A stretch of 64,000 nt of DNA from Sminthopsis crassicaudata. Taxonomy: Eukaryota. Position 1 is the stretch's first letter; each line of letters opens with the position of its first letter. The notes under the pieces were generated by a model. That model had not been told where the DNA came from. It saw only the letters and a list, made by a program, of their open reading frames with translations, and searched no databases. Both the position numbers and the translations under genes were made by a program. The stretch covers positions 650,606,558 to 650,670,557 of the forward strand of contig NC_133619.1 in assembly GCF_048593235.1 (NCBI RefSeq), given 5' to 3'. Of the stretch, positions 1 through 45,103 are shown piece after piece.

Positions 1-710
1 TACTACTGGGCTTATATCCCAAAGAAATACTAAAGAGGGGAAAGGGACCTGTATTTGCCAAAATGTTTGTGGCAGCCCTTTTTGTAGTGGGTAGAAACTG
101 TAAAATGAATGGATGCCCATCAATTGGAGAATGGTTGGGTAAATTGTGGTATATGAATGTTATGGAATATTATTGCTCTGTAAGAAATGACCAGCAGGAT
201 GAATACAGAGAGTCTTGGAGAGACTTACATCAAGTGATGCTGAGTGAAATGAGCAGGACCAGGAGATCACTATACACTGCAACAACGATACTGTATGAAG
301 AAATATTCTAATTGAAGTGGAAATCTTCAACATAAAGAAGATCTAATTCAGTTCCAGTTGATCAATGATGGACAGAAACAGCTACACCCAGAGAAGGAAC
401 ACTGGGAATTGAGTGTAAAATGTCTGCACTATTGTCTTTCTACCCAGGTTAGTTATACCTTCGGAATCTAATTCTTACCGTGCAACAAGAAATTTGGTTT
501 TACACACAGATATTGTATCTAGGTTATACTGTAACACATTTAACTTGTATGGGATTTCCTGTCATCTAGGGGAGGGAGGGGAAAATTTGGAAAAGTGAAT
601 ACAAGGGATAATGTTGTAAAAAAAAAAAAAAAAAAAAAGAAAAAGAAAAAATTACCCATGCATATGTACTGTCAAAGAAAAATAATTATAAAATTAATTT
701 TTAAAAAAAA
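1..710 (+). mobile_element. LINE-1 3' end (ORF2 C-terminus, 3' UTR, A-rich tail), marsupial type
   Basis: ORF 63-311 MFVAALFVV...CPSIGEWLGKLWYMNVMEYYCSVRN matches the L1 ORF2 C-terminal region; A-rich run 617-650; same sequence recurs at about 6640-7555, 32590-33191 and 36165-36790. Confidence 0.92.
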
Positions 711-3649: not shown

Positions 3650-3900
3650 CATCACACAAGGAGCAGAGATTGGGAGAGGAGGAGATGAACCTGCTGGGGA
3701 CACAGGCTCAGCCCTGGCAGAGGGGGGGATAGAGCCCTGCCTTACCTGTCACCACTAGTTCCAGGGCCTCATTGGTTCTGGACAAGCCAGACTCTTGTAG
3801 AAGTAGCAGTAACTCCCTGCAGTGTCTTTTGTCATAGAGGGGAGGAGGAAATGAGCCATTCTGGGATATGTAAAAGCAACACAGAAATGCGGTAAGCATC
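3650..3900 (-). pseudogene. LRC Ig-like receptor pseudogene relic (3' half of an Ig exon plus a small stalk-like exon)
   Basis: Minus strand AHFLLPSMTKDTAGSYCYFYK, frameshift, then SGLSRTNEALELVVT-G with donor ag|gtaag at 3746/3745; small AG...GT segment 3650-3690 (GSSPPLPISAPCVM) only 55 nt downstream. Confidence 0.75.
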
Positions 3901-6149: not shown

Positions 6150-7555
6150 AATTTGAGTCAATTCTCTAGATAGTTTAGAAATGAGGTCTTCATCAGAAAC
6201 TTTGGATGTAAATTTGTTTCTCAGTTTATTGCTTTCCTTCTAATTTTGTCTCCATTGGTTTTGTTTGCACAAACCCTTTTTAACTTAATATAATTAAAAT
6301 TATCCATTTTGCATTTCATAATGTGCTCTAGCTCTTCTTTGGCCACAAATTCCTTCCTCCTCCACAATCTGAGAGGTAGGCTGTCTTTTGTTCTAATTTT
6401 CTTATACTATCACTCATTATGTCTACATCACGAACCCATTTCAACTTTATCTTGGTATAAAGTGTTAGCTGATGATCAATGTCTAGTTTCTGCCATATTT
6501 CCAATTTTACCAGAAATTTTTGTCAAATAGTGAGTTCTTATCCCAGAAGCTAGGGTCTTTGGGTTTATTGAACACTAGATTACTATAGTCATTGTCACTA
6601 ATTTTTTTTTTTGCAGGAGGTGGATTTCTTTTTTTTAAATCATAACTTTTTATTGACAGAACATATGCCTGGGTAATTTTTTACAACATTATTCCTTGCA
6701 CTCATTTGTGTTCCGACTTTTCCCTTCCTTCCCTCCACCCCTTCCCCTAGATGGCAGGCACTTTTATACGTGTTAAATATGCTATAGTATATCCTAGATA
6801 CAATATATGTGTGCAAACCCATACAGTTCTCTTTTTGCACAAGAAAAATTGGATTCAGAAGAAGAAAATAACCTGGGAAGAAAAACAAAAATGCAAGTAG
6901 TCCACACTCATTTCCCAGTGTTCCTTCTCTGGGTGTGGCTGATTCTGTCCATCATTGATTAATTGGAACTGGATTAGCTCTTCTCTATGTTGGAGATATC
7001 CACTTCCATCAGAACACATCCTCATACAGTATCATTGTTGAAGTATATAATGATCTCCTGGTACTGCTCATTTCACTCAGCATCAGTTCATGGAAGTCTC
7101 TCCAAGACTCTCTGTATTCGTCCTGCTGGTCATTTCTTACAGAGCAATAATATGTCATAATATTTATATATAATAATTTACCCAACCATTCTCCAATTGA
7201 TGGACATCCATTCATCTTCCAGCTTCTAGCCACTATGAAAAGGGCTGCCACAAACATTTTGGCACTTACAAGTCCCTTTCCCCTCTTTAGTATTTCTTTG
7301 GGATATAAGCCCAGTAGTAGCACTGCTGGATCAAGGGGTATTGATAACTTTTGATAACTTTTTGAACATAGTTCCAAATTGCTCTCCAGAATGGCCGGAT
7401 TCTTTCACAACTCCACCAACAATGCATCAGTGTCCCAGTTTTCCCTCATCCCCTCCAGCATTCATCATTATCTTTTCCTGTCATCTTAGCCAATCTGACA
7501 GGTGTGTAGTAGTATCTCAGAATTGTTTTAATTTGCATTTCTCTGATCAATAGTG
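6150..7555 (-). mobile_element. LINE-1 fragments (ORF2 piece 6150-6610; ORF2 C-terminus and 3' UTR 6638-7555)
   Basis: ORF 7009-7377 (-) SIPLDPAVLLLGLYPKEI...CPSIGEWLGKL; T-rich tail end at ~6600-6650. Confidence 0.9.
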
Positions 7556-8839: not shown

Positions 8840-10800
8840 TTAAAAGAAGTCACACCGGTCCCTTTGTGAACACAGAGGAGATGGATTCAAGTAGTGTCCT
8901 GGCGGCAGAGTCTGCACTAGATGGGGCCAAAGGGGTTGGGATGGGAGATGAGAGGAAGAGTCCCAGCTCAGCAGAGTGGGAGATGATGGTACCTAAAAGG
9001 GGAGTCTGGGGGAGGGAACATAAGGGTCCCATTTGACACCTTTGAGATGCCTGTGAGATGTTGAAGATGGGGATTTGGAGATCAGGAGAGGGACTAGAGC
9101 TAGATCTACTGATGTGGGGGCAATCTCCATGGCTGATCCATGGACTCCGGGCAACTGAGGAACTCACAAAGAGAAAAAGAAAAGAGAGTCCTGGACAGAG
9201 TCCCAGACGCACCCCACACCAAAGGGGCAAGAAATAAGTATCTCCCAATGGAGTGTGAGGGGAGGCCAGAAAGATAGGTGAAGAAAGAAGGAAGAATGTC
9301 ATGAAGCCAAGAAAAAAGAGAGTTTTAGGGGGCGGCTAGGTGGCACAGTGGATAGAGCACCAGCCCTGAATTCAGGAGGACCTGAGTTCAAATCTGGTCT
9401 CAGACACTTAACACTTCCTAGCTGTGTGACCCTGGGCAAGTCACTTAACCCCAGCCTCAGGGGTGAAAAAAAAAAGAAAGAAAAAGAAAAAAGAGAGTTT
9501 GAGAGGAGAAGGAGCAGGAGGAGGCTTAAAAAAATTAAGAAAACAAAACAAACCCCTGAGCCCCACTATTAAAGTATTGAAAGAAATACTTCTTGGTTTT
9601 GAAAGAAAACCCTAATGTATAATTATATTTATTTATTCGTAGTAGAAAGGTGGAGAAGGAGGGACATAAGGCCATCAGAGTGTGGGAGATGGGTGGGGAG
9701 CAGCCTTTCAGAACCCTCCCAGTGGAGGAGGAGTCTTCCAGGCAGAGGGCAGGGGCTGCCACACAGCTAAAGCTGAGGAAGGGGCAGGAGGGGATTTCCA
9801 GCATGTTAGCAAAAAAGAGGGCTAGAAGTCAATAGTTTGGGGCACTGGAAAGCAGGATTGTTGGGGGGGGGCAGAGTTCAGGGTGATGTGGACCTGAGTT
9901 TGTTTGTCAGGAGAAAAGAAATAAGCTCAAGAAGGAGAGGCTGAAAGCGAAGAAGGGCCTTCGGTGCCAACGGGCTCCCAGGAGACGGGAGAGCTAAGAC
10001 TGGGGGCCGGGGTAGTCTCTTAGTGAAGAAAGGGCCGCCTCCAGATCAGAAGATGGAGAGAAGATGGCAGACTCTGGGCAGAGGGACGACAAGGGCATGA
10101 AGGGACGGGAGGCTCTGGCCAGAAATTGTCTTGGTTCTAGGAGGGGAAACCTCCTGCTGAGAAGATGGCAGCAGAAGAAGGGACTGGGGGCTGGAGAAGA
10201 CAAAAGAAGAGGTGTCCTTTGGGGGGGGAATTGAGGAAGAGCCCGTGTGGGTGATTCTGTGGCCCTGCCTGAGCTGCCGGGGCGGACTTTAAGAGGGGGA
10301 TACTTTGAAGGTGGCCATTATCGGAGTCCTCCGACATGATGATGGAGAAGAAGGCTGGAGAGAGGGCTGTGCACCAGACGCTGGGCCAAGAGGCTGAGCT
10401 GGAAGGGAACGTGAAGGTTTTCAGGAGGGGAGAAATGGTGCTAGGAGAGCTCTGCACCCAGCCGTAGAGGCCGGGAGCCTCCCAGGCTGGGGAGCTCCGG
10501 GACCTCCCCGCTCCGAGACAACAGGGGAGGAAAGCCAGGGGCTCGGCATCTCGGCGGGAGAAGCAGAGAAGGAGGGGAGGAGGTTGGGCAAGAGTAGAAT
10601 CTCCTGGCAGAGTTCTAGAATGCTTGTGAAAGGCCTGGTTTGTGACCTTTTAGGAACAGAGGTGCTGGTCACTGAGGGCAAGATGTCTTCAACAGCAGGT
10701 TCTGCTCCTTTCCTTGCTGGGGTGACTGACGGGAAAGAAGGGGCTCCGCGGTTCCAGGATGCCTAGAGTTCGGGAAGCGTTTGGCAGAGTCGCCCGCGTG
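8840..10800 (-). mobile_element. Long degraded LINE-2 ORF2 relic, interrupted by a WSINE1
   Basis: Minus translations such as SPKGHLFFCLLQPPVPSSAAIFSAGGFPS*NQDNFWPEPP align by eye with the L2 segment SPQRLFQTFSSLLKPP...SAEDLASYFTEKIEAIRRELP; unusually GC-rich. Confidence 0.55.
9329..9490 (+). mobile_element. WSINE1-type SINE, full length
   Basis: ggggcggctaggtggcacagtggatagagcaccagccctgaattcaggaggacctgagttcaaatc... with A/B boxes and A-rich tail. Confidence 0.92.
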
Positions 10801-11365: not shown

Positions 11366-11541
11366 GCCTCATCCGCAAGAACTACACCGTGACTGACATC
11401 ATCAAGATGGGGCTGGCCGCCATGGCCCTCACCGCCCTGGGGGCCCTGCTGGCCGAGGACTGGTACAGCCAGAGCCGGACCAAGAAGGGATCGGGCGTGA
11501 CTCTCAATAAGAAGTTTCCCAGGGCCAAGAAGAAGGTATAA
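11366..11541 (+). CDS. Orphan LRC-type transmembrane/cytoplasmic terminal exon (Lys in TM)
   Basis: Acceptor ttgtcccctcag|gc (phase 1); GLIRKNYTVTDIIKMGLAAMALTALGALLAEDWYSQSRTKKGSGVTLNKKFPRAKKKV*; matches the DYTxxNLIRxGLA...LAEDWHS pattern of GP6/OSCAR/LILRA/FCAR TM exons; no + strand Ig exons found upstream in window. Confidence 0.85.
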
Positions 11542-12061
11542 CGTGGTTCAGCCGGCGCGGGCAGGCGGGGAGGGGAGGCTTCCCTCCCTGACGGGGTCCC
11601 CCGCCCTCTGTACCCTCTGTAACTCCTCCCTGTGTGAGCCATAAACGTTCTCTGAGCATAGACGTCCGAGCCCTGCCCTGTGCTCCCCCAAGGGTGGGGA
11701 TGGCATTGCTATGCAGGTGGGTCACTTCCCCCTGGGGCAGCCCGGCCCCACTCCCTGAGCAGTGTGGGGGATGCGGGATACATTCTTCTGCAGGGACCCT
11801 CACGGCCCCCCACCGGGGACGCGTCCCGAGCCAGCGGAGTCCGGGCTCTGCCCCCTCCTCGCTGGGTGACCCGTCCCCTCTGAGGCCTTGGCTCCCCCTT
11901 TGGTTGAGTGATGGGGTCGCCATAGGTGCTGTTGGGGGTCCCACGCCTCTCTGAACCCCCAACCTAAGGTAGAGGGAGGTCACAGTAGTTGGGCTGCACG
12001 GGGCAATGGTGACTGCGGCCTTCTGGCCCCTGGAGTCCAGGAGTCTTCAGAGGGTCCCCTT

Positions 12062-12354
12062 CTAGACCCCAGAGGAAGGGGAAGAGGCAGGACACCGTAG
12101 GGGACCCCCCACCAAGTGCTCATGAGGCAGCTGGGGTGGCCAGTGCCTGCCCTCCCCCAGGGCCGGTCTCTTCATTCCAGCTGTGCACAACCCCCTCCCC
12201 CCCCCCACACGCCCCTTTGTCCTGGCCTTCCGCCTGGAGCTAGGGTCCCTGGAGACCTCCTGGTCCCCGGCCACGATGGGCCCAGCCTGGCCTCCGGACT
12301 GGATCAGGGACCGGGGACCGGGGTCCGGCCTTGGCACCCCTCCCACCCCCAGCT
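12062..12354 (-). pseudogene. Possible degenerate TM-type exon with lost hydrophobicity
   Basis: Acceptor catcccag|ag; DPGPRSLIQSGGQAGPIVAGDQEVSRDPSSRRK matches my consensus DYTVGNLIRLGLAGLVLVALGVLLAEDWHSRRK at 11 of 33 positions in register; open to stop at 12062. Confidence 0.3.
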
Positions 12355-13719
12355 CTGGGATGAGGCCCAGGGCAGCAGAAACGGGAGAAAAGGAAGGTCC
12401 TTGGGGTCACCATTGGAGGGCCCAGGTCAGGGTCACTCTGGTCCTTGCGCCAACTTGTGCTGTTCCCAGCTGAGGACACAAGGGTCCACCATGACCCCCC
12501 CCCCATCTTCCTCACATGTCCCAGAGCTGGGCTGGGGGGAGGAAGGAGAATCTGAGAATGGCCCTGGAAGGGACAGACCTGCGGCTGCCCGGACCTGACC
12601 CTCAGCAGCTTATCTGGGCCAGGACAGGGCCCTTCTGCTCTCGTGGGGCTCTGCTGCCAGGGCCACGTCTGGGCCACAGGAGCAGGGCATGGGAGGGGGG
12701 TGGGCACTCCCCAGAGTAGGACAGAGGACAACAGCAGGACTCTGGGAAGAGCTCGGGGACTTAGAGCAGGGACTCCAGGTGCCTCCCATGGATGCTCCCC
12801 ACCCCGGGTCCTGAGAAGGGGGAGTGGCAGGGGAGGGGAGGAGAAGGAGCAGGCAGAAAAGCAGACCCGAATTCCTGAAGATGGCTTAGAAGCAAAAAGA
12901 AAGCAAGGATCTGAGAAGCAAATCAGGGGAGGAGAACAGAGGAGGCTGGGGGGGGCAATGGGCAGCAGCACCCCCTCACCCCACTACCAGCAGCTCGCGG
13001 TCCCCCCAGCAAGCACTTATTCCCGGCTGTATCCATCCATCCATGAGGGTTAGGTGGGCACACACCCAGGGCCTGGCGCATCTGACCTGAGGGGGCAACT
13101 GCAGCTGGAAGATGATGGGACCTGCCCCCTAGGCCCTGTGCTCAGCAAGGGGGTCAGGCGGCCGGCCCGTGAGCATCAGCCTCGGCAGCCTTCCCCGGGG
13201 CTTCCTGAGCGGAGGAGCAGCCAGCTTCACCTTTCAGGTGGCTGTGAATGGGGAAGGGGCCCAGGGCTCGGCCCGTTGGGATGTAGCAGAACATGGCCAC
13301 GTGATGGAGACAAGCCAGTCTGGATGCCAGGAGACTGAGACCTCCCTATACCTTAGCTCTACAAGCTTCAGGCCCACCTTTCCAGACCGGTCACCTTCCA
13401 CCATTCCGTATTCCAGACCAACAACTTGTCCCCTCCCATCCCCCTCCAATGGTACTCCCCCTGGCCTGGAAGGCCTTTACACCTGCATCCGCCCTCCCAG
13501 AGGCTTCCACCCCCTCCAGGTGGCCATGGATTAGGGCTGTCTCTCACGACATTACTTTGAATTGACCAGCCTGCTTATTCTCTGCCCCTTAATCTTCCAC
13601 CCAATCATCTGGAAGAATGCAAATCTTCAGGAGGACAGGAGCCGGAGTGTGTGTGTCCATTTCTCAGGACCTAGCACACTCCCAGCCCACAGTCACCACT
13701 TAATAAACATCGGTTGAAA

Positions 13720-16245
13720 AACTCATCTGGAAGAACAAAAGTCAAAGATATCAAGAGAATCAGTGGGGGGTAATGGGTTGGGAGAAGGTGGTCTAGCCAT
13801 TCCAGATCTCAGACTGTATGATAAAGCAGCAATTATCAAAACAATTTGGTCCTAGCCAAAAATTAGAGTGGTAGATCATAGAATAGATAGGTACACATCA
13901 CATTATAGTAAATGATCATAGTAATCTAGTATATGATAAACCCAGTGATCCAAGCTTTTGGGACAAAAGCTGCTGGAAAAACTGGAAAACAGGATGGCAG
14001 AAACTAGACAAAAACCAGTATCTCGCACCATATACCAAGATTAGGGCAGAATGAGTAAAAGTGATACCATAAGCAAAGAAGGAGAGCATGGGCTAGTTTA
14101 TCAGATCTATGAAGAAGAGAATTTAAGATGAAAGAAAATCTAGAGAGAGTTGTAAAATATAATTTTGATTACATAAAATTAAAAAGGTTTTGTGGCTCTG
14201 GGTTTTTTTTTTTTTTTTGAGGCTGGGGTTAAGTGACTTGCCCAGGGTCACACAGTCAGAAGTGTTAAGTGTCTAAAACCGGATTTGAACTCAGGTCCTC
14301 CTGAATTCAAGGCTGGTGCTCTATCCACTGCGCCCCCTAGCTGCCCCCAAAAAGGTTTTGCACAAACAAAATCAATGCAACCAAAATTAAAAGAAAACTA
14401 GGGGGAAAGTGTTTGCAACAAGTATCTGATAAAGGCCTCATTTCTCAAATATATAGAGAACTGAGTCAAGTTTATAAAAATGCAAGTCATTTCCCAATTG
14501 ATAAATGGCCAAAGGACAAGAACAGATAATTTTCAGAAAAAGAAATCAAAGCTATTGTCATATGAAAATATGCCCTAACTATTGATTATAGACATTTAAA
14601 ACAATTCTGAGGTACCATCTCATACCCATCAGATTAGCTAATGTGACGAAAATGATCAATGTTGGAGAGGACATGGGAAAACTGAGACATCAGTGGATTG
14701 TTGGTAGAGCTGTGAACTTGATCAGATTCTGATTGTTGCCCCCAGCCCAACCCCCACAGAAATACAAGTCAATCCCACCACCATCCAAGAAGTTTAGGCA
14801 TCCTACATATACTATAGATACTGTAGATATCAGCCAATGAGAAAGTCCAACAGGATGTAGACCAGGACATTGAGCTACCAACTTCAATAAATCTTTCCCC
14901 TGACACGGCACCTGTGAACTATCCTTTGCTTTCCTTTGAATGAATTTATACAGTCAGGCTAATTATAACAATAATATACATTAATGTTTCCTAATGAGCT
15001 TCTCTATATGCATTCTGGGTAACCACATGTATAATTCCATCAAGGCTTTAGGACCATTCCAGATTCTTCCTGTAACCTCAAAATCTACATCTCTTGTGAT
15101 GTAGGCAACTTCCATAAATATCTTTATCTTGGTTTGCTGGGCTGCTAAGTCCTGCTAAACTTTCTTGAGTTACGTAATTCTCAAATATATTTAATTTAGA
15201 GATGGTCTGAGATTTAAATTCTCTCAAAAACATCGCAGCATCTATCTACTTGGACCCCAACAAGCTGATTCAGCCATTCTGGAGAGCAATTTGAAACTCT
15301 GCCCAAAGGGCTATAAAGCTGCATACCCTTTTATCCCACCGTAACACTACTAGATCTGTATCCCAAAGACATCAAAAAGAAAGGGGTGGGGAGGACCCAT
15401 TTGTACAAAAGCGTTTCTAGCAGCTCTCCTTGCAGTGGCTGAGAACCGAACTCAAGGGATGGCGATCAGGTGCGGAATGGCCAAACAAGCTGTGATGTAT
15501 GATTGGAGGGCATATTTTTATGCTGTGCGAAATAAGTGGGAGAATTTCCGAAAAGCCTGGAGAGACTTACTGAACTGATGCTGAGGGAACAGGAGCAGAG
15601 AACACAATACCGGCAATATCGTTTGAGGAAGAATTGTGAATGACTTAGCTATTCTCAGCAATGCAACAATACCAGATATCGCAAAGGATTAATGAAGAAG
15701 CGTATTATTCACTCCAGAGATACTGATAGTGCTCGGATACAAACTAAAGCTGCTACTTTTTCACTTTCCTTCTTTTTTGAGTCATTTTGTACAAAATTAC
15801 TAATATATGTGTTTTACTTGATTGCACGTGTATAATTGTTCATCATCTCAGGGAGGGCAAGAAGGGAGAGGTAGAATTTGGAACTCAAAACTAAAAAAAA
15901 AAACTAGGTAAAATTCATTTTAACTTGTAATTAGGAGGGTAAACTGTTTGCATTTTTTGTTTTTCTTCCTTTTTTTACCTTCCAAATCTAATTCTTCCAT
16001 TGCAACAACAACAGCAAAATTCGGTTCTGCACACATATATTGTACCTAGGATATACTATAAGATATTTAATATGTATGGGAATGCCTGCCATCTAGGGGA
16101 GGGGGTGGAGGGAAGGAGGGGAAAAACTCGGAACAGAAGGGAGTACAAGGGATAATGTAAAAAATTACCTATGCATATGTACTGTCAAAAAATGTTATAA
16201 TTATAAAATTAATTTTAAAAATTTTAAACTTGTAATTAGGAAAAT
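13720..16245 (+). mobile_element. Mosaic of LINE-1 ORF2/3' fragments with nested SINE, LTR and a younger L1 3' end
   Basis: L1 ORF2-like sequence 13720-14730 and 15263-15900; younger 3' UTR ~15940-16245; nested antisense WSINE1 ~14200-14348. Confidence 0.8.
14734..15262. mobile_element. Putative solo LTR inserted in L1
   Basis: TGTTG...CAACA termini; interrupts the L1 motif gtgaactgatc...ccattctggagagcaatttg; CCAAT and AATAAA inside; TSD not clean. Confidence 0.5.
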
Positions 16246-16876
16246 AAATATATATTTTAAAATCTTGGTTGAACTAAATCCCAAAAATCAGAATCAGAGA
16301 ATCCTCTTAGGAATCATGCAAAATCCTGAGAATCAGAGAACTTCGTTCTGCAGCACTTCAGGTGAATCCAAACCTGGGAAGTGGATATTCGGCGCCTGCC
16401 TGAAGGTCCTCGAAGAAGAGCATGCGCTCTTAAAGCAGCCCCTTTCACCAGGGGATGACTTATTGTGAGGAAGATCTCCTTGGCAATGGAAGGGACAAGG
16501 AAAGGAACAAGCATTTATTGAGCACCCACTATATGTCAGGCACTGTGCTGAGCACTTGATTCTCACAGCCACTCTGGAAGGCAGGGGCTATGAGTTTACA
16601 TTTGAGGAAACTGATGCAGGCCAAGATTAAGTGACTAGGGTCTGACGCAGCTGCTAATGGCTGAGACAGTATCTGCCCTCCGGTCTTCCTGACTCCACTC
16701 TAGGCATCGTGGCCCCCACCTGCCCTAACATTTTATATCAGCTTTCAGTGCCAGGCTTGGGTTTATGCTGAAGGAACAGGGATCCACCACGGATTTCTGA
16801 GTAAGGAGAAACAGGTCAGACCCTCATTCTCTGAATGCTAATTTGCCAGCTGTGCAGAGGGTGACTGGGAAGCAGG

Positions 16877-17070
16877 GAGATTACTCAACACATGGATTCT
16901 AATCAATCAGCATTTATTCAGTGCTTGCTGTGTACAGAATACCATGAGACTACTCAACACATTGATTTGATTCAATCAGCATTTATTCAGTGCTTGCTGT
17001 GTACCATGAGATTATTCAACACTTTGATTTGATTCAATCACCATTTATTCAGTGCCTGCTGTATACAAGG
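16877..17070. repeat. Three tandem copies (~62-69 bp) of an L2 3'-end-like unit
   Basis: gagattactcaacac...aatcaatcagcatttattcagtgcttgctgtgtac repeated three times with few differences. Confidence 0.85.
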
Positions 17071-17678
17071 TACCTTGCTAAGTGTTGGAGAGAGACACAA
17101 AAATAACAGTCTCTGCCCTGGAAGAGGAACAAGGTTCTTTCAACTGTTCAGACAAGTGGCGCTGGAGACCTGACCTGGAACGGGGTCTGTGTGAGTGGAT
17201 CCCAAGGTCACAGAGGTCTTCCAGTCCAAGCCCCTGGATTTACAGACAAGGAAAATGAGGTCTGATGACTTGCCTGGGGTCCTGTGGGAAGTCACTGGCT
17301 TCACCAGGCCTGGCCCCAGCCCCTCTGCTCCTAAAGCTACGATTCTTGTCCATCGTATCAGGGGAGGAGGGGGCAGAGGTCTGGGTTAAAATGGCATCCT
17401 CATCGTTGGACGGGGGCTGAGGAAGAGGGAGAGTGAAGGCTAACCAGCTCTGAGGCTGGAGACCCGAGTGGCCATCCATGGTCCCCATGGGCTATGTGTG
17501 TGTGGAGGAGATCAGTGGGAGGGCAGTGATGTGGGTCTGCTAGGACAGGCTGATGGGACAGTTCTGAGGAGGGGGAGAGGGGCCTGTGGCCTGAAGCCCC
17601 AGCCCAGAAAGAAGGCTGAGACGCCCCCCCCCGACTCTGTCCTTGGCTCACTAGCCGGGGAGCCGAGCCTCTAGGAGC

Positions 17679-17851
17679 TTAGAGGCCCAGCCTGGCTTCC
17701 CAGGGAGTCAGCGCCAGGTCTACGAGAACGAGTCCGGCCATGTTCCTGGAGAGGCGGAGGAGACAGCCTGGTGGTGAGGGGCTGGACCGTGGGGCCGGTG
17801 GCGAGGGGCTGGACCGTGGGGCCGGTGGCGAGGGGCTGGACCGTGGGGCGT
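17679..17851 (-). pseudogene. Possible degenerate TM exon preceded by 3 x 27-bp in-frame repeats
   Basis: DAPRSSPSPPAPRSSPSPPAPRSSPSPPGCLLRLSRNMAGLVLVDLALTPWEARLGL*; LLRLS..MAGLVLV...WEA resembles NLIRMGMAGLVLVVLGILLFEA; weak acceptor. Confidence 0.35.
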
Positions 17852-18099
17852 CTCCGGGACAAAGGCAGCCAGCAGGGCCGGCCCGTAGGCCCCAGCGGGC
17901 AGCCACCTAAGGCTGCTCTTGTCTCTCCCTACCAATCATGGACACCAACTTCCCGGGGCTCACTTTGGCCATTTTTCCCTAGTTGCCCTGGCAGAGAAAA
18001 CAGAAGGTGATAGGAAAGGGGCGCAGAGCGGGGATGAATCACCGTCAGCTCTAATGCCACGGGGCCGAGGAAGGCCTCCAGGAATAGGGAAGGTCCTAG

Positions 18100-19200
18100 G
18101 TGGGACTAGAATCTTCAGGCAAAATTCTAGAATGTATCCTGAAAGGGGCGGTTGTGAGACCGTATAAAGGGGAGGGTCATCCCTAAGCGCCAGGATGGAC
18201 GAATCAGCGGGCCGTAACTTCCCCGGCTCATCTCCCTTTTTGGCGGGGCTGATAGAGCAATGGCCTAGCCTTGGAGTCCCTGGAGATCAGGGAAGCATCT
18301 GCTTAAGTGGCTCATTCTCTCCTGTGGGCAAGGAGGGAAAGGGCCATTTGGGCAATAATGTAGCCGCATGGACTCGGGAGGAATTGTTGAGCAGACCTGG
18401 AAAGCGTTCAGAAATGGGTCCCTGAAAGCTCGGAGGCAGCTAGCTGAGCGCCTCGGCCATCTTCACTTTCATCAATGGCTTGGCTGGAAGGTATTCTTTG
18501 TCAGGCTGCTGGGAGACACAGAGCTGGAGGGGACGGCGGGCCCGAGATCCCCAAACTAGGGCGGAGGAGACGGGCAGCCGGGCAGCGGGGAAGGGTATCT
18601 GGACCTGTCCTTTCCCTGGGCCGGGCAGCTCCCAGGAGGGAAGTCCCAGGGGTGTAGACACGCAGCTGGCGACTTAAAATCTCAGTGCTGTCTAGGAAAC
18701 AGAGGAGTTGCTTGGTACAGACACGCAGCTAGTAAGTAAGTGCCAAGAACAAGAGTTGAATGCCGAGATTTCTGGCTTGATGGAGTATACCCCATTGACC
18801 AAAGTAAACACATCAGTATAAAAAAGTTAGCTTGACAGTGGAGGGGAGAACCTTGCTCCTTTGGGAATGGAAAAGATCTGGGGTTTTGGGTGGACCACAA
18901 GCTCAAAATAGGATAGAAATGGGATGGGATCGGGCCGCTGGCCAAGCAATTGGTCCCCAGCACAATGGGGTGGTCCTGCCTGAGCCCGGCCCGGGGGACC
19001 ACAACCAGACGGCAGTTTGGGCAGCAGAGTCTGAGAAGCTGGAAAGTGCCAGGGGGTGGCCAGATGGTAAAGGGGGTCGTGGTAAATGGGGAGTGGCGAA
19101 GGAGTTAAGGAGATTGGACCTGGAGAAGAGCAGGCTGGGGCCGGAGGGGGACGTGCCCAAGGCTCGAGCCAGGGAGATGTGGCAGGAAACCGGGGAGGCT
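18100..19200 (+). mobile_element. Degraded L3/CR1 fragments
   Basis: IVEQTWKAFRNGSLKAR resembles CR1 ORF2; gaaaagatctggggttttgggtggaccacaagctcaa and cctggagaagagcaggctggg match the L3 3' region. Confidence 0.6.
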
Positions 19201-19296
19201 GATTGGGCTCGGAGGGCTTCCCCCCTCCCCGAGGGCTATGGGGGCCGGAAGCCCCGCCGGTGTACCTAACTGCCCCACGCTCTTTGGTCTCCGCAG

Positions 19297-19535
19297 ATTT
19301 AAGCCCCGACAACCCCACACTCAGCCATTTCATCCGCGTCGGGCTGGCCTCTCTGGTTCTGGTGGCACTGGGGATTTTGTTGGCCGAGGACTGGCACAGC
19401 AAGAAGGATCCTGAGAAGGATCCAGGGGACATCCTGTTTGAGAAACCAAGTTATTCAGACATCAAGGCCAAGTTTGGAAGGTCTTGGAGAAAGTCTTCCA
19501 CCATCTCCAGGCACGGGAAAAAGGGACGGCTCTAA
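19297..19535 (+). CDS. Orphan LRC-type transmembrane/cytoplasmic terminal exon (Arg in TM)
   Basis: Branch-point-like cctaac, acceptor tctttggtctccgcag|at (phase 1); DLSPDNPTLSHFIRVGLASLVLVALGILLAEDWHSKKDPEKDPGDILFEKPSYSDIKAKFGRSWRKSSTISRHGKKGRL*; LAEDWHS as in GP6. Confidence 0.88.
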
Positions 19536-19671: not shown

Positions 19672-20812
19672 CCTATGCTCCCCGTCCCCAAGCTGTGCTC
19701 CCCATCCCCCGATCCCAAAGCCATCCTGCTCCCTGTCCCCAAGCTGTGCTCCCCGACCCCCATCCCAAAGCCATCCTGCTCCCTGCTCCCTGCCCCCAGA
19801 CTGTGCTCCCCGTCCCCCCATCCCAAAGCCATCCTGCTCCCCGTCCCCAAGCTGTGCTCCCCATCCCCCGATCCCAAAGCCATCCTGCTTCCTGTCCCCA
19901 AGCTGTGCTCCCTGTCCCCCCATCCCAAAGCCATCCTGCTCCCTGCCCCCAGACTGTGCTCCCCGTCCCCCGATCCCAAAGCCATCCTGCTTCCTGTCCC
20001 CAAGCTGTGCTCCCTGTCCCCCCATCCCAAAGCCATCCTGCTCCCCGCCCCCAGACTGTGCTCCCCATCCCCCGATCCCAAAGCCATCCTGCTCCCCGCC
20101 CCCAGACTGTGCTCCCCGTCCCCCCATCCCAATGCCATCCTGCTCCCCGCCCCCAGACTGTGCTCCCCGTCCCCCCATCCCAATGCCATCCTGCTCCCTG
20201 CCCCCAGACTGTGCTCCCCGTCCCCCGATCCCAAAGCCATCCTGCTCCCCGCCCCCAGACTGTGCTCCCCGTCCCCCGATCCCAAAGCCATCCTTCTCCC
20301 CGCCCCCAGACTGTGCTCCCCGTCCCCCCATCCCAATGCCATCCTGCTCCCCGCCCCCAGACTGTGCTCCCCGTCCCCCGATCCCAAAGCCATCCTTCTC
20401 CCCGCCCCCAGACTGTGCTCCCCGTCCCCCCATCCCAATGCCATCCTGCTCCCCGCCCCCAGACTGTGCTCCCCGTCCCCCCATCCCAATGCCATCCTGC
20501 TCCCTGCCCCCAGACTGTGCTCCCCGTCCCCCGATCCCAAAGCCATCCTGCTCCCCGCCCCCAGACTGTGCTCCCCGTCCCCCGATCCCAAAGCCATCCT
20601 GCTCCCTGCCCCCAGACTGTGCTCCCCGTCCCCCGATCCCAAAGCCATCCTGCTCCCCGCCCCCAGACTGTGCTCCCCGTCCCCCGATCCCAAAGCCATC
20701 CTGCTCCCCGCCCCCAGACTGTGCTCCCCGTCCCCCGATCCCAAAGCCATCCTGCTCCCCGCCCCCAGACTGTGCTCCCCGTCCCCCCATCCCAATGCCA
20801 TCCTGCTCCTTG
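19672..20812. repeat. 51-bp C-rich minisatellite, about 22 copies
   Basis: Unit cccagactgtgctccccgtcccccgatcccaaagccatcctgctccccgcc; 17-aa periodicity in the six overlapping ORFs. Confidence 0.97.
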
Positions 20813-33869: not shown

Positions 33870-36150
33870 GCGCGCCCCCCAGCAGATCTATGCGAGGTTA
33901 CAGCCTCCGGCGCCCGGCGCAGAGCAGCAGGACATCCCTCCCTCCCCCCGCCCCCCCCCCCCCCCGGTAGGCCGCAGGGAGTCCGCCGGGGAAGGGCTCG
34001 GGGAGCCGCGTCTAAGCCTTCCAGCCGAGGCTCCGGCTTCCTCCATCTCTCAGGAGGCGGCTTCGGGCTCGGCAGTTTCCTCGCCACACGAGCCCAGATC
34101 CCGCGCTGGCGCGAAGTGAGACTAAACAAGGCCCGGCACGTGCGGCGGCAGCGCCCGCTCCGCGGCTCGGCGCCTTCTGGCCCGGAGCTGGCCCCAGGGC
34201 CCGGCGGCGCTCGGGCACGCAGGCTCCGGGGAGAGCCGCAGAGATCGCTGAGGCGCGGGGAGGAGAAGCACTCCTCGCCCCTCCCCCATGCCCTCGGAGG
34301 TCCAATCCGCGGCCTTTCCGGCGTCCAGACTGCCTCGGACCCTCAAAGACCGGAGGGAATGTCGGGGGGAGGGGCAAGCTCGTTCGGTCCCGGGAGGAAG
34401 CCCCTCGGCAGGACCGAGCAAGGAGGAGCAAGTGGCGAGGAAAGTGAAAGGAGAACGGGCCAGGGACGGCGCGGGCGGGGGAGGGGCGAACGCTACGAGA
34501 CCCCGGCACCAAGCGCTCCTTCCCTCTTCGGGACCCCAAACGGGACGAGCCCCTTGGGGTACCGCCGCGGTCCCCGGCTGCCCGTCCCGCCCCGCGGCCG
34601 CCCCTGGGGACCCCAAACGGGACGAGCCCCTTGGGGTACCGCCGCGGTCCCCGGCTGCCCGTCCCGCCCCGCGGCCGCCCCTGGGGGTCCCAGGCTGCCC
34701 GTCCCGCCCCGCGGCCGCCCCTGGCGGTCCCCGGCTGCCCGTCCCGCCCCGCGGCCGCCCCTGGGGGTCCCAGGCTGCCCGTCCCGCCCCGCGGCCGCCC
34801 CTGGGGGTCCCAGGCTGCCCGTCCCGCCCCGCGGGCCGTCCCTGGGGGTCCCAGGCTGCCCGTCCCGCCCCGCGGCCCCGGTCCGTTCTTGGCTCTGAGT
34901 CCCAGGAATGGCACTTGTTCAAGTCTGGCAAGGACCTTGAACTTGTCTGATTTCCTCTCAGCCCACCGAGCGGTCCATCGGCGGAGCCGCGTTTAGCCCG
35001 GCCGGCCGCGGGCGGAGCGGGGAGGGAACGGAACCGCCGCGTCGGTCTGGGAGGCGCCCACGGTCCCGCTGGGAAAGACGCGCGGCGGCCCGGCGCTGCT
35101 CCGGGGCCCCGAGAGAGGCCCGGGCCTCGGGCAGATAGCCCAGAGCGCCTGTGCGGGCGGAGCGAGGGCGGCTTCCGGGTGCGGGCCCTCGACTTTTGGA
35201 GGGTCTGGAGGGACTTGGTGAATGAGAAACGGGGTCGACGCCCGAGCGCTGGGGGAAGGCTGGGACCGGCCGGCCAGCGCCGCGCCAGTCACGGGGGGAG
35301 GGGCGTCGCTCTGTGCGGGGGAGGAAGCACCGATCGGAGCTAGAGGAGGAGGAGGAACGGGAGAGGAGCGGATGAAGAGAAGCCGGACAGGGGCAGAGCG
35401 CCCGCGGGCCGAGGACCGGAGCCCTCCCGCAGGCGCCGAGCGAGGCCCGCGGGAAAAGAGTACGCGCCTTCCCTGGGACTGCGGAGGGCAAGGCGCCACT
35501 GAACTGGGAGCTGGGTCACCCTCCGCAGCCCGAGAGGGGAAAATTCTCAGAGATCTGAGTGCCGGGTGTGTGTGTCAGAGCCAGAGACAGAGATGAGAGA
35601 GACACACAGAGAAACGGAATGACAGGCAGAGACATACACACGCGGAGACTACGGAGAAGAGACTGACGGAAACGGGACTGAGAGAGGGGCCACGTCCGCT
35701 GCCCAGCTTTGCTGAGAGGTGAAAACAGACCCTTTTTGCTGAGGGAAGAACGGAGGAGCCCGCTAGGGGGCGCTGCAGGGCCCCTCCCACTGCACCAGCC
35801 GGGTGCCCGAGCGAGTCTGGGAGGTCCGCAGATCCTCGGCCCCGGGACCCGCCTGGCTCAGAACGAGCTTCGCGCTTCCCCCGGCGCCGCGGCCTGACAG
35901 CGTTTCCTTGCGGCAGCAGCGGGGAACGAGGCGCGGCAGCCTGGCCCGGGAAGGGGGCTCCGGAGGCCGAAAAGCCAACGGATTTTAAAGGAGCTGCCCA
36001 GTGGGTGACTTAGGGACGAGTCCTCCCCTAAGGAAGCGGAAGCGAGGCCAGAGCGCGGTCAGGGGCGGCCCCGCGTGCAGAGGCGCCGCCCGCAGCTCTC
36101 CCTCCGCCCGGGCCGTTCTCCCCCAGAGACGCTGGCTATGGCCCGGAAAA
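33870..36150. promoter_or_regulatory. CpG island with no assigned coding gene
   Basis: Very high GC and CpG density; long ORFs are low-complexity; E-boxes (CACGTG) at ~33298 and ~33534 just upstream. Confidence 0.6.
34530..34880. repeat. GC-rich compound tandem repeat (2 longer ~77-bp units then 40-bp units)
   Basis: Core gctgcccgtcccgccccgcgg occurs 7 times. Confidence 0.92.
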
Positions 36151-36164
36151 TAAGGCAGATAAAA

Positions 36165-36790
36165 TGTTTGTGGCGGCCCTTTTTGGAGTGGCCAGAGACT
36201 GGAAGTTGGATGGATGCCCATCAGCTGGAGAATGGTTGGGTAAATTGTGGTATATGAAGGTTATGGAAAATTATTGCTCTGTATTAAATGACCAGCAGGA
36301 GGAATACAGAGAGGCCTGGAGAGACTGACATCAACTGATGCTGAGTGAAATGAGCAGAACCAGAAGATCGCTGTACACTTCAATGTTGTATGAGGATGTA
36401 TTCTGATGGAAGTGGAAATCTTCAACATAAAGAAGATCCGGCTCACTTCCAGCTGATCGATGATGGACAGAAATAACTGCACCCAGAGAAGGAACACTGG
36501 GAAATGGGTGCAACCTGTTTGCATTTTTGTTTTTCTTCCCAGGTTATTTTTACCTTACAATTCTTCCTGTCCAAACAAGAAAGTCGGTTGTGCACACGTA
36601 GATTGTATCTAGGATCTCCTAGAACACATTTAACATGTGTGGGACTGCCTGCCATGGGGGGGGGGGCGAGGGAGGGGAAAATTCGGAACCGAAGGAGTAT
36701 AAGGGATAATGTTGCGAAAAAAATTACCCAGGCATATTGTACTGTCAAAAAATATATAATTATAAAATTAATTTTAAAAATTAAAAGAAA
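36165..36790 (+). mobile_element. 5'-truncated LINE-1 3' end
   Basis: aaaatgtttgtggcggccctttt...aattataaaattaattttaaaaa; possible diverged TSD ggaaaataaggcaga / ggaaatatggcaga. Confidence 0.88.
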
Positions 36791-41800: not shown

Positions 41801-42845
41801 TGTGCTCTGAGGGGGAAGAAAAAAAGGGGACACAAGACAACACTTTTTACTTCCTCTATTCCCAGGAGCCCCTCGAGCCCCTTCCCCAACAAAGTCAGAC
41901 ACTCCGGCGGGTAAGGCCATCTCCAGGCTCCTGTGCAAAGGCTCCCCACGGAGGGCCTCCATACCCCCAGCTGTCACTGGGGGCCCCACCTTTCCTCAGC
42001 TGTGCTCCCTGGGGCAGGGGTGGGGGTCAGAGCCGGGGGGTCTCCAGGGAGAAGGCCTGGAGAAGGGGCTGGTGGTCCCTGGGAGAAGCATCCTGAAGCA
42101 CGGCTGTCACACAGGGTGCCCAGCGTGGCAGCCTTCCTCTGTCCAGGCTTATAAATGAGGGGCCTGGAGTCCGTGGCTCTTGCCTTCCAAATGGAACCCC
42201 TGGGTTTCCTCTGCTAAAGACAAGAATGGAGGAGAGCACCCCGCGGGTGGCAGACACAGGGAGGTGGCCTTCTCTCCATTCTCTTCTCCTATTTCCAGGC
42301 GCTCTCATACCCCTCCACGTTTCCACAAAGAAGGTGGACGTCCCAACAGGTGAGCAAGCCAGAGCTCCCCTCTCCGGGAGGCACTGCCTCATTTCCCTGG
42401 CCTTGACGCCCTTCTGAGTCAGGGCCCCCCACTCTCCCCCCCCCAGGCCCAGGGACCTGGGAGGAGCAGGTTTTAGGGGCCAAGAGGCTGGTTTCCAGGG
42501 CAGACACCCCTTGCATTGGCTGCCTCGGTGTGCCTGGGATCTCAGCCAGGGCTCTGAGGTAAGGGGAGGACCCCCTCTCCCCGCCAGAGATCCCATCTGA
42601 GGAGAGAGCCCTAGTTCGGAGGCCGCTCCCGGAGCCTTCTGCACCCAGCCCATGACCCCCTTCTCTCCGCAGGTCCCAGCCCCCAGGATTACACCGTATC
42701 CAACCTTGTGCGCTTGGGCCTGGCCGCCGTGGTGGTGACGGCCCTGGGGGGGCTTCTGGTCGAAGCCTGGCTGGCCTGGAGGGGGGAGTTCCGCGGGCTT
42801 TCGGGCCGCTTTTCCAGGCCCCAGACCCAGCAGCCCCACAGGTGA
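38880..42845 (+). CDS. GP6-like two-Ig-domain LRC activating receptor (8 exons; one +1 frameshift in exon 4 as assembled)
   Basis: Exons with GT-AG and phase 1 throughout: 38880-38913 (MGSSLPPLLLF-G), 39293-39328 (36-bp signal exon), 39434-39721 (D1: [13 protein letters not shown]...GKYRCSYSIGSRWSQPSTKLELVVT), 40747-41032 (D2), 41480-41524, 41866-41910, 42299-42349 (stalk), 42673-42845 (QDYTVSNLVRLGLAAVVVTALGGLLVEAW, TM Arg). 318 aa if the extra C at 40981-40986 is removed. Orthology to GP6 not proven. Confidence 0.85.
39885..40720. repeat. ~38-41-bp minisatellite, 22 copies, in intron 3 of the receptor gene
   Basis: Unit ccgtacaaatgcgcacagctcccccggagggggggctcc; 18 copies with tgcgcac, 4 with tagcac. 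Confidence 0.97.
41310..42015 (+). repeat. Tandem duplication containing a 45-bp stalk exon in each copy
   Basis: Exons at 41480 and 41866 (386 bp apart) with near-identical flanks. Confidence 0.93.
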
Positions 42846-45103
42846 AGGGACTGTCTCCACAGTGATCCCGGATCCTGCAGCGGCTCCAGAGACTGGGGAG
42901 GGAGGGGCAAACAGTCTGGGAGCCTCAGCTGTAGCTTCATAAAGCCTGCTGTGTGTGGGTGAGCCCCTTTGTGCGTCCATCCGTCCGTCAGCGTCCGGTC
43001 CAGGCCTCCTCAAAGACCGGCTGGGGCCGGCGATATCAGCTCCAAACAGAAGCACAGAGCCATTTCCTCAGGGAGCCCCCACCTAACCCTCCAGTGCTGA
43101 CACCTATACACCCATTTTACAGACGGAGCCTTCAGAGGGGGGAAGAGATTACCCAAATAATGGACACGTCTGCTCCACCCGAGGAATTCCCCCTGGCCCC
43201 ATGGCAGCCCCCCCCCCAGCCTCTTCCTCCCAGGTTCCCCAGCAGAACCCAGCTCTGCCAAGGTCGCCTTAGTCCAGGGCGCCCCCGCCTTCCACCATCC
43301 GGTCAGGCCGCCCTAACCTGGATCCTGGGCCCGGGGCCCCTTCCTCCTTCCCTTCCTGTCCCCTCCCCCAGCCAGCACCCCAGGAGGAGAAGGGGACTGA
43401 GGATTCACCCCCACACACTTTAAGGTTGGAATGGCAGCCATTCTGCCCAGGCAGGAGGGAGAGGGCTCATCCCCATCTTACAAGTGAGGAAAGTGAGGCG
43501 AGGCCGCCCGGGAGGTGGCTCTGGCCAGGAGGGACCCTTGGGACCCCAGCACGCAGCGAGGCTCGGACGGCTCAAGGTCCCTGGGCAGAATTGAGGAGCC
43601 CGGCCTGGCTGCTCTGTGAGCTGGTTTGTGTAAGCCCCTCTCCTCTGGGCGGGCCCCCCCCAGCCCCCCCCACAGCGCCGTAGACGCAGAAGGGGAGAGC
43701 CAGGACCTGAACACCGAGGAGGAGGGAAAGGCCGGCAGCATTTTGAGCCGGGGAGGCCTCCCTTTGTGGAGGAGGACCCTGAGCCTGGGAAAGGGGGAGT
43801 GTGAGCTGGCTGGGGATGCAGAGGGTGGGTGAGGGGCGGAGCTCGCAGCACCTCTCCAGCTGGAGGGAGGCCGAGGGGCCTGTGCTCCTGGCCGCGGAAG
43901 GACCTCAGGCTCCTCTTCCTCCCACTCCATCCTGTCTAGTACACCCCCCCCCCCCTCAGCTGAATCTGGAAGCCATTACTCTTCCCAAGCCAGGCTCCAG
44001 GAAATTCCAGGCCAGGAAGCAGAGCAGTGGGGGCACAGGGGGAGGGGCAGGTCCCAGGGCTCCCGGGCATCTCCTCCAGCCGCTCAAAGCCTCCTCCAGC
44101 TCCGGAGCCCCAGGAGAAATTCCAGCCTCCTCTCTCTCGCCCTTATCCCTAATCTGAGGTCGGTCCAGCACCCAGGGGGGAATTCCTGGACCGCTGGCCC
44201 TTTAAATCCCAGAGCCAAACTTTCGGGGCTGACAGAGGGAGGGATGGGGAGGAGGGGCCAGGGACTTAACCCTCCCCACCCCGCGAGGGGCCAGATTGGG
44301 CGTCGGCTCCGGATCCTCGGGCTCCCGCTCCGGTCTCCTTTTCTGGCATGGCCCCCTCCAACTGGGGCTGACCCCCGGGCCAGGTAGGACGGGACGGGAG
44401 CTTCGGGGTCCCCAAGGGGGTGGGGCTGCAGGCTGGACCCCAGGATCCCCGATGGAGCGAGGCCCGGGGGCTCGGACGCCTGGGTCCCTGAGGCCCCTCC
44501 TGGCTCTCCCCTTGCCAGGTAAAAGGAGGGGTGCTTGAGGAGTTGTCGGACTCCAGGGGGCCCAGCCCCTGCAGAGTGGAGCTGGCCAGGACTGAGGACC
44601 CTCCCGGGGCGCAAGGATCCCCCTAAAGAGTAAGGGGGACAGTGGGGTGGGGGGGCCAGCCCGGGGCAAAGAAGCCACGTGGGCGGCCGGGGTGGGGGTG
44701 GAGGGAGCCTGGGGACGCTGCGGAGGGCCCGGCTCCGACGGGGCTGGGCTCCCCACCCCCAGCCTCTCCTGGAACTGGAGAACCAGTCCAGCGGGATCCA
44801 GGTGGGTGTGATTTCCGCCTGGGAGGGCCCGAGATGTTTGTAGGGGGAGGGGTAACCGGGGACACGTGGAGGTGAGCCAGCTGGAGGGAGTGGAGAAGCT
44901 GGCCTAGCTGGGGGGGGGGGGGGGGGGGCAGAGAGAATGGGCTCCTGGAGCCCGGCCGGGGGCCGCTCCCTCCTCCCGTTGGAGGCGAGCCCGGGAGGAC
45001 TCTGGGTAGCCTGGCCGCAGAGGGGCCCGTTGGGATTCTAGGGAAGCCGCTCTCCCGCCCCCTCGCGGGCTCCCGGGCTAACCCGCGCTCTCCTCTCCTC
45101 CAG

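What the first reader, a model, noticed from the sequence alone, without database searches (positions are those of the whole stretch)
11366..19535. Array of orphan activating-receptor TM/tail exons: alternative terminal exons or receptor debris
Seen: two stop-free, hydrophobic, phase-1 TM/cytoplasmic exons on the + strand about 8 kb apart. Both have good acceptors and the LAEDW(Y/H)S motif, and both appear to follow a degraded L3 fragment. I found no signal or Ig exon on + anywhere in 1-19 kb. Known: LRC activating receptors (GP6, OSCAR, FCAR, LILRA) end in one such exon. Inference: one gene starting left of the window could choose between terminal exons and swap its TM charge and tail while keeping one ectodomain. 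I do not know of such a switch in the eutherian LRC. The alternative is two genes whose ectodomain exons were lost or misassembled.
Basis: partly seen in the sequence, partly recalled or inferred. Interest (0 to 1): 0.72.

Follow-up and report, generated by a model that had tools for sequence, protein, structure and literature searches.

The report
Two partnerless immune-receptor membrane-anchor exons
Two genuine exons for the membrane anchor and tail of activating immune receptors sit 8 kb apart in the dunnart's leukocyte receptor complex with no matching ectodomain exons nearby; they look like leftovers of gene turnover, and the proposed exon switch could not be tested.

Summary
Both exons exist at the stated coordinates: A at 11366-11542 and B at 19297-19535, both on the + strand. 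A profile built only from annotated LRC receptors scores them at 54 bits, slightly above the terminal exon C (42673-42845) of the two-Ig receptor gene in the same window. All three start at a phase-1 acceptor four codons before the (D/N)(Y/P)T motif.

I found no Ig, V-set or leader exon on the + strand in 1-19.3 kb. The only nearby trace of a receptor is a frameshifted Ig pseudoexon on the minus strand at 3738-3860.

Exon B has one close relative, UniParc UPI0007B40E19 from an unknown organism. The two are 75% identical with no gaps. The TM core and a 16-residue tail block are almost unchanged, while the linkers are saturated. That model also carries an out-of-frame copy of an exon-C-like exon.

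Exon A has no close relative and has changed both signature residues (NxxR to DxxK).

Best reading: two old, separate remnants of LRC gene birth-and-death. B was constrained until recently and may still be; A is probably a relic. The alternative-terminal-exon switch is untested.

The parts
11366..11542 (+). Exon A: LRC-type TM/short-tail exon, phase-1 acceptor, 57 codons then stop. The TM signature is D-I-I-K in place of N-x-x-R, and the TM ends in LAEDWYS. A possible GT donor sits at 11537, just before the stop.
   Evidence: 54.6 bits against a profile of annotated LRC TM segments.
19297..19535 (+). Exon B: LRC-type TM/tail exon, phase-1 acceptor, 78 codons then stop. The signature is H-F-I-R, followed by LAEDWHS. 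The 44-residue tail carries a YSDI (YxxPhi) motif and a basic Ser/Thr-rich end.
   Evidence: It is 75% identical to P0001 over 59 aa without gaps.
10592..10652 (+). Copy 1 of the shared 63-nt element, about 0.75 kb upstream of exon A.
   Evidence: Local alignment score 27, against 15.2 +/- 1.7 for shuffles.
18104..18166 (+). Copy 2 of the shared 63-nt element, about 1.15 kb upstream of exon B. Either a repeat fragment or leftover intron homology.
3738..3860 (-). Decayed Ig-domain pseudoexon on the opposite strand. Only the C-terminal half remains, and the frame breaks between ...KDTAGSYC... and ...ALELVVTG.
   Evidence: (58% over 31 aa to the Trichosurus LILRB3-like P0007, E 1e-4). It does not reach Pfam thresholds.
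42673..42845 (+). Exon C, for comparison: the terminal TM exon (N-L-V-R type) of the two-Ig receptor gene at 38880-42845. Its acceptor sits in the same place and phase as those of A and B.

Best explanation
A and B are two anciently diverged copies of the terminal transmembrane/cytoplasmic exon used by FcR-gamma-coupled receptors of the leukocyte receptor complex. They lie at the CDC42EP5-LENG9-LENG8 edge of the dunnart LRC.

Each is now separated from any recognisable leader or Ig exon. This is what the birth-and-death turnover, exon shuffling and pseudoexon formation described for marsupial LRCs would leave behind. The two exons are not used together.

Exon B belongs to a distinct lineage that is also present in another marsupial, upstream of an exon-C-like exon there too. 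Its membrane core and one tail block have been kept by selection. It therefore is, or was until recently, the working 3' end of an activating receptor. The conserved Arg would pair with the adaptor's Asp, and the tail carries a YxxPhi motif.

Exon A has replaced both signature residues (Asn to Asp, Arg to Lys) and has no known relative, so it is more likely a still-open relic.

Shown: exon identity, exon boundaries, absence of partner exons, and conservation of B. Inferred: loss of the ectodomains, the present activity of B, and the relic status of A.
For: Exon homology and shared boundaries:
- The profile scores and the conserved acceptor position and phase are common to A, B and C.

No partner exons:
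- tblastn, Ig HMMs, Pfam on both strands and a leader-pattern scan all come back empty.
- The region is broken up by AT-rich stretches with repeated ORF fragments that look LINE-like.
- A frameshifted Ig pseudoexon lies on the opposite strand at 3.8 kb.

A and B are old and separate:
- They share 44% amino-acid identity.
- DNA similarity inside the exons is limited to 27 nt.
- They do not pair in the tree, whereas B and P0001 pair at 99/99.

B has been under constraint:
- Against P0001, the TM core matches 27/29 and the tail block 16/16, while the linkers match 1/14, with no gaps.
- P0001 also carries an out-of-frame copy of an exon-C-like exon, 62% identical over the TM stretch, which points to the same gene order in that species.

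A departs from the family:
- It is the only sequence among about 46 aligned TM segments with D and K at the two signature positions.
- Its best database match is generic, 51% over 39 aa.

Literature:
- The opossum LRC has 233 Ig exons, 74 TM exons (45 of them NxxR), pseudoexons and exon shuffling, and is flanked by Ttyh1-Leng8-Leng9 (PMC6557307).
Against: - Both exons are fully open, with intact acceptors and a poly(A)-like hexamer 53-98 nt after the stop. Neither shows actual decay.
- B's conservation argues that something still splices into it, yet I found no 5' exon. Under this reading, the loss would have to be recent.
- The organism of P0001 is unknown, so the time depth of the conservation is inferred, not shown.
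- Short stalk exons or a non-Ig ectodomain would escape every search used here.
- There are no RNA data of any kind.
Confidence: 0.5

Rival explanations
1. One reading: one receptor gene starts left of the window and ends in either exon A or exon B. The two are mutually exclusive terminal exons, so one ectodomain would be given either a D/K membrane segment with a short basic tail or an Arg membrane segment with a Tyr-bearing tail.
For: - Both exons are on the same strand in phase 1, have good acceptors and are followed by poly(A)-like hexamers.
- No ectodomain exon lies between them or within 11 kb upstream.
- If B is still used, as its conservation suggests, its last intron must span A.
- A is exactly 171 nt up to a GT at 11537, so including or skipping it would keep the reading frame.
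Against: - There is no RNA evidence.
- No predicted protein in the searched collections contains A, and only P0001 contains a B-like exon.
- An intron of more than 19 kb, full of repeats, would be unusual next to a 4-kb receptor gene in the same window.
- The only Ig trace to the left is on the opposite strand and is broken.
- A lacks both signature residues.
Confidence: 0.12
2. Two intact genes whose 5' exons I could not see. The upstream exons may be short or not Ig-like (a small adaptor-like membrane protein), or the assembly may have dropped, inverted or misplaced the Ig exons.
For: - Both exons are intact.
- B is conserved.
- A 20-N gap lies at 2284-2303, and the Ig pseudoexon just to its right is inverted relative to A and B.
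- Marsupial LRCs are known to be hard to assemble and annotate (PMC9618407).
- The P0001 model places a 30-residue non-Ig N-terminus in front of its B-like exon.
Against: - No Pfam domain of any kind appears on either strand in 1-24.9 kb.
- There is no leader-type exon and no CpG island or similar promoter hint.
- The P0001 N-terminus has no counterpart in the window, and the model is plainly chimeric.
- B contains no Met at all, and the only ATG-started frame into A is an incidental read-through across its acceptor.
Confidence: 0.2
3. Both exons are dead debris that merely has not yet picked up a stop codon. The similarity of B to P0001 would then be shared ancestry between close relatives or paralogs, not selection.
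For: - Both exons are orphans.
- Stretches of 57-78 open codons are not rare in 60-65% GC sequence.
- No annotated protein contains either exon.
Against: The differences between B and P0001 are very unevenly spread: 13 of 14 linker positions differ, against 2 of 45 core and tail positions, with no indel. That is not the pattern of neutral drift. Both exons also keep exact exon boundaries and score as well as the bona fide exon C.
Confidence: 0.15

Closest known systems
NxxR-type transmembrane exon of FcR-gamma-coupled LRC receptors (GPVI, OSCAR, FcalphaRI, NCR1, activating LILRs, TARM1), as defined by Guselnikov and Taranin 2019 (PMC6557307)
   Same: Strong profile match at 54 bits. One exon encodes the juxtamembrane (D/N)xT motif, the TM and the tail. 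The acceptor is phase 1, acidic residues close the TM (LAEDW), and the exons lie inside the LRC beside CDC42EP5, LENG9 and LENG8.
   Different: Neither exon keeps the Asn: A has Asp and B has His. A also replaces the Arg with Lys. Neither is attached to recognisable Ig exons.
UniParc UPI0007B40E19 (P0001), a 260-aa predicted protein of unknown organism
   Same: The only close relative of exon B: 75% identity over 59 aa without gaps, an identical 16-residue tail block, and a 99/99 pairing in the tree. It also contains an exon-C-like exon, which suggests the same gene order.
   Different: It is a chimeric model with no Ig domain. It reads the C-like exon out of frame and leaves the B-like exon after ...DIKAK, where the dunnart sequence has no GT donor. 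Its species and locus could not be retrieved.
FCAR (CD89) TM/cytoplasmic exon
   Same: Exon B aligns colinearly with primate FCAR-type proteins over 65-66 aa to their C-terminus, at 34-39% identity. The tails are of similar length, and KPSYS lines up with EPSW(S/R).
   Different: Similarity in the tail alone is marginal, with shuffle p of 0.02-0.16, and the tree does not join them. The abstract of PMC4016189 describes a receptor class as found only in placental mammals; from my own knowledge this is the IgA receptor, but the fragment I read does not name it. This is a lead, not a membership.
Marsupial LRC (MAIR) pseudoexons and genes that lack some exon types
   Same: The published opossum and devil maps list error-bearing Ig exons, pseudoexons and genes without a detectable TM exon. 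They attribute the family's diversity to expansion and contraction and to exon shuffling. The minus-strand Ig pseudoexon at 3.8 kb is of that kind.
   Different: Here the reverse is seen: TM exons without Ig exons. I did not find this case discussed in the parts of that paper I read.
Receptors whose isoforms differ in the tail through alternative 3' exons (for example the NKp30/NCR3 isoforms; from my own knowledge, not checked here)
   Different: Those isoforms keep one TM and change only the tail. Swapping the whole charged TM exon is not something I know of in this family, and nothing here shows that it happens.

Membership tests
NxxR-type TM exon of FcR-gamma-coupled LRC receptors | Arg in the outer third of the TM, needed for pairing with FcR-gamma | tested here: inconclusive
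   Exon B keeps it (FIRVG). Exon A has Lys there (IIKMG).
NxxR-type TM exon of FcR-gamma-coupled LRC receptors | Asn three residues before the Arg | tested here: not met
   A has Asp, B has His and P0001 has Gln. Every other aligned LRC TM segment that covers this position has Asn.
NxxR-type TM exon of FcR-gamma-coupled LRC receptors | DYT-type motif at the N-terminal end of the exon | tested here: inconclusive
   A has NYT, as several annotated members do. B has NPT and P0001 has SHT.
NxxR-type TM exon of FcR-gamma-coupled LRC receptors | Acidic residue(s) at the cytoplasmic end of the TM | tested here: met
   Both exons have LAEDW.
NxxR-type TM exon of FcR-gamma-coupled LRC receptors | Overall sequence similarity to annotated members | tested here: met
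   54.6 and 54.2 bits against a profile of 42 annotated TM segments, with E about 1e-15 in the six-frame window. The library search gave 39 hits; all 12 read in full carry such TM segments, and the 23 looked up are, where named, LILR, FCAR, NCR1, LAIR2 or Ig-like proteins.
NxxR-type TM exon of FcR-gamma-coupled LRC receptors | Phase-1 acceptor at the conserved position; the single exon carries the TM and the tail through to the stop | tested here: met
   A, B and the bona fide exon C all start four codons before the motif, in phase 1, and run to a stop.
NxxR-type TM exon of FcR-gamma-coupled LRC receptors | Location in the LRC | tested here: met
   Pfam identifies CDC42EP5 (BORG_CEP, PBD), LENG9 (MJ1316, AKAP7_NLS, zf-CCCH) and LENG8 (SAC3_GANP) at 44.9-53.8 kb of the window. 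The published flank matches.
Functional LRC activating receptor gene | Leader and C2-type Ig exons upstream on the same strand, spliced to the TM exon | tested here: not met
   None in 1-19.3 kb by tblastn, Ig HMM, Pfam or leader pattern. Sequence to the left of the window was not available.
Functional LRC activating receptor gene | Expression and splicing into the acceptor | not testable with these tools
Functional LRC activating receptor gene | Association with FcR-gamma or DAP12 | not testable with these tools
   This needs co-expression experiments.
FCAR (CD89) orthologue | Significant similarity of the tail beyond the shared TM type | tested here: inconclusive
   Colinear over 65 aa, but tail-only shuffle p is 0.02-0.16 and the tree gives no support.

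The most novel reading that the evidence does not exclude
Exons A and B are mutually exclusive terminal exons of one LRC receptor gene that starts left of the window. One ectodomain could then be fitted either with an Arg-type, adaptor-coupled membrane segment and a Tyr-bearing tail (B), or with an Asp/Lys segment and a short basic tail (A). Switching signalling mode by swapping the whole membrane exon is not described for this receptor family.
Probability: 0.1. Interest if true: 0.7.

Novelty: new member of a known kind. Interest (0 to 1): 0.27.

Why it matters
Marsupial leukocyte receptor complexes are large, fast-evolving and poorly annotated. The reviewed paper reports RNA-seq support for only 8-16% of LRC gene predictions. 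Knowing which loose exons are live and which are debris matters for counting activating receptors.

As it stands, this is an ordinary product of gene turnover. Two points go slightly beyond that. Exon B defines a conserved TM/tail lineage that keeps the Arg but not the Asn of the signature and carries a conserved Tyr-containing tail block. Exon A is an open exon with an Asp/Lys pair where the family has Asn/Arg.

If transcripts showed both exons being used by one gene, that would be a new way of toggling receptor signalling. Nothing here shows it.

Tried and rejected
**RNA evidence**
- The look-up of sequencing runs listed 17 holders, none on record as RNA.
- Pieces overlapping it were left out of the Pfam scans.

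**Relatives**
- The search for homologous proteins found nothing with exon B (candidates of 60-192 aa) or with exon A (114-362 aa), and only P0001 itself with the B-like part of P0001 (143-455 aa).
- P0001 is not on record in the look-up of encoding contigs.
- The Trichosurus locus of P0007 came back without DNA.
- So no orthologous DNA, no dN/dS and no synteny walk were possible.

**Hidden ectodomain exons**
- I ran tblastn with the window's own two Ig exons and with 39 LRC proteins, Ig HMMs with --max, Pfam on 136 + strand and 132 minus-strand pieces, and a leader-exon pattern scan.
- All were negative on the + strand.

**Other negative checks**
- L3 claim: no reverse-transcriptase or other domain was found, and no repeat library was available. 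Only a shared 63-nt element turned up.
- A similarity between the regions upstream of B and C is a GC-rich tandem-repeat artefact.
- The 3' flanks of A, B and C do not align convincingly.
- There is no CpG island near either exon.
- The FCAR-tail idea is only marginal.
- The tree of TM segments is mostly unresolved.

**Spliced models**
Exons were searched singly, by reference.
Full report
**What is there**

On the + strand, exon A begins at 11366 after ...cccctcag and runs 57 codons to a TAA at 11540-11542. Exon B begins at 19297 after ...ctccgcag and runs 78 codons to a TAA at 19533-19535.

Both are phase 1. Both have a 72% pyrimidine tract and no competing AG in the 40 nt before the acceptor. 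Each encodes a juxtamembrane (N)(Y/P)T motif, a hydrophobic segment with one basic residue near its start, the closing motif LAEDW(Y/H)S, and a basic tail.

**Is it more than chance?**

Yes. A profile of the two exons, searched against 1.84 billion representative proteins, returned 39 hits at E<=1e-3. All 12 that I read in full carry such TM segments. The 23 whose source names I looked up are, where named, LILR, FCAR, NCR1, LAIR2 or Ig-like proteins.

To avoid circularity, I built a profile from 42 of those annotated TM segments, without any window sequence and without P0001. I then scanned the six-frame translation of the window. A scores 54.6 bits and B scores 54.2 bits. The only other hit is a third exon, C, at 42673-42845, with 48.3 bits.

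C is the normal last exon of a two-Ig receptor gene. That gene has its leader at 38880, Ig1 at about 39433-39723 and Ig2 at about 40746-41034. A, B and C all start four codons before the motif, in the same phase. The exon boundary itself is therefore conserved.

**Context**

Pfam identifies CDC42EP5 at 44876-45601 (+), LENG9 at 45973-47271 (+) and the SAC3/GANP part of LENG8 at 53280-53837 (-). Earlier notes of this scan name the genome as the fat-tailed dunnart.

The published opossum map places the main LRC cluster directly beside Ttyh1-Leng8-Leng9. It counts 233 Ig exons and 74 TM exons, 45 of them of the NxxR type. It also describes pseudoexons and exon shuffling (PMC6557307). The window therefore sits on the edge of the dunnart LRC.

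**Are the exons really orphans?**

Within the window, yes.
- tblastn with the window's own Ig exons and with all 39 LRC proteins found nothing on the + strand before 39 kb.
- Ig HMMs run without filters on every open piece of 15 aa or more also found nothing there.
- Pfam found no Ig, V-set or other credible domain on all 136 + strand pieces of 38 aa or more in 1-19.3 kb, nor on 132 minus-strand pieces in 1-24.9 kb.
- A scan for the family's 34-nt leader exon recovers only the known one at 38880.
- There is no CpG island.

The one nearby trace of a receptor is on the other strand. At 3738-3860, half of an Ig exon reads ...FLLPSMTKDTAGSYC..., breaks frame, and resumes ...ALELVVTG. It is close to a Trichosurus LILRB3-like protein. 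Receptor debris does therefore exist here.

The claimed L3 fragment could not be identified. What the two exons do share upstream is a 63-nt element in the same orientation, at 10592-10652 and 18104-18166. It is 75% identical, occurs only twice in the window, and scores 27 against 15.2 +/- 1.7 for shuffles. It is either a repeat fragment or the last visible intron homology of an old duplication.

**How A and B relate**

They are old paralogs. Amino-acid identity is 44%, and DNA similarity inside the exons is confined to 27 nt around LAEDW. In a tree of TM segments they do not pair; A sits alone on a long branch. The tree is poorly resolved overall.

**Exon B**

Its only close relative is P0001 (UniParc UPI0007B40E19, 260 aa, organism not given). 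The alignment covers 59 residues at 75% identity with no gap. The differences are very unevenly spread:
- TM core: 27/29 identical;
- tail block GDILFEKPSYSDIKAK: 16/16 identical;
- the two linkers: 1/14 identical.

That is a pattern of constraint, not drift.

P0001 is a chimeric model. Further on, it reads an exon-C-like exon in the wrong frame, with 62% identity over the TM stretch. This suggests that the B-like exon lies upstream of a C-like gene in that species too, and that B has diverged no faster than C.

From the accession range I suspect P0001 is an opossum model. That rests on memory and is not shown.

B keeps the Arg but not the Asn of the NxxR signature (H in dunnart, Q in P0001). 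B aligns colinearly with FCAR proteins to their C-terminus at 34-39% identity. The tail alone is only marginally similar, with p of 0.02-0.16, so I keep this as a lead only.

**Exon A**

It is fully open and scores as well as C. It is nonetheless the only aligned sequence with Asp and Lys at the two signature positions. Its best database match is generic, 51% over 39 aa. No predicted protein of 114-362 aa contains it.

It is exactly 171 nt long up to a GT at 11537, one codon before the stop. It could therefore in principle be skipped or included in frame. The donor is weak.

**What could not be done**

No run is on record as RNA. I worked beside those places afterwards.

No genomic DNA of another marsupial could be fetched. 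There are therefore no junction data, no dN/dS and no check of the assembly.

Exons were searched one by one, by reference.

**Verdict**

The most likely reading (0.5) is that these are two separate leftovers of LRC gene turnover:
- B comes from a conserved lineage and was constrained until recently. It is possibly still used by exons I cannot see.
- A is probably a relic.

The alternatives are these:
If B is live and its 5' exons lie left of the window, A would sit in its last intron.
- Two intact genes with unseen 5' exons, or a misassembly, get 0.2.
- Wholly dead debris gets 0.15.

This is a new member of a known kind and of modest interest unless transcripts show otherwise.

Noticed in passing
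window 40981-40986: The Ig2 exon of the neighbouring two-Ig receptor gene changes reading frame at a run of six C. Before the run it reads ...YRCYGFDSHSP; after it, the expected ...YLWTFPSEPLELRVKG continues in another frame. This is either a real frameshift (a pseudogene) or a homopolymer error in the assembly.
   Followed up: partly
window 19676-20809: A 51-bp minisatellite of 22 copies, 92% matching, starts 140 nt after the stop of exon B. It keeps all six frames open for more than 1 kb.
   Followed up: no
window 3738-3860 (-): A frameshifted half of an LRC Ig exon lies on the opposite strand. Its motif FLLPSMTKDTAGSYC is almost identical to that of a Trichosurus LILRB3-like protein. A 20-N gap lies 1.4 kb away at 2284-2303.
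   Followed up: partly
P0001 (UniParc UPI0007B40E19), mapped to window 19296-19472, 42323-42346 and 42649-42849: This database protein is a chimeric gene model. It joins a B-like exon to a short piece and an out-of-frame TM exon of a C-like receptor, and it contains no Ig domain.
   Followed up: partly
window 3-308 (+), 7012-7404 (-), 15354-15575 (+), 36032-36325 (+), 50650-51105 (+): Open-frame fragments at 3-308, 7012-7404 and 36032-36325 share a ...[10 protein letters not shown](D/E)EYRE(S/A)WRD... motif. The fragments at 15354-15575 and 50650-51105 resemble them more loosely. They look like pieces of one LINE family, but Pfam gives no match and I had no repeat library.
   Followed up: no
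window 42673-42845 (+): The terminal exon of the two-Ig gene beside CDC42EP5 reads DYTVSNLVRLGLA..., which from memory resembles OSCAR more than GPVI. It pairs at 97/88 with a TM segment of UniParc UPI0003C8D034 (P0009) in the tree.
   Followed up: no
The tool says this filter can also trip by chance.
   Followed up: no
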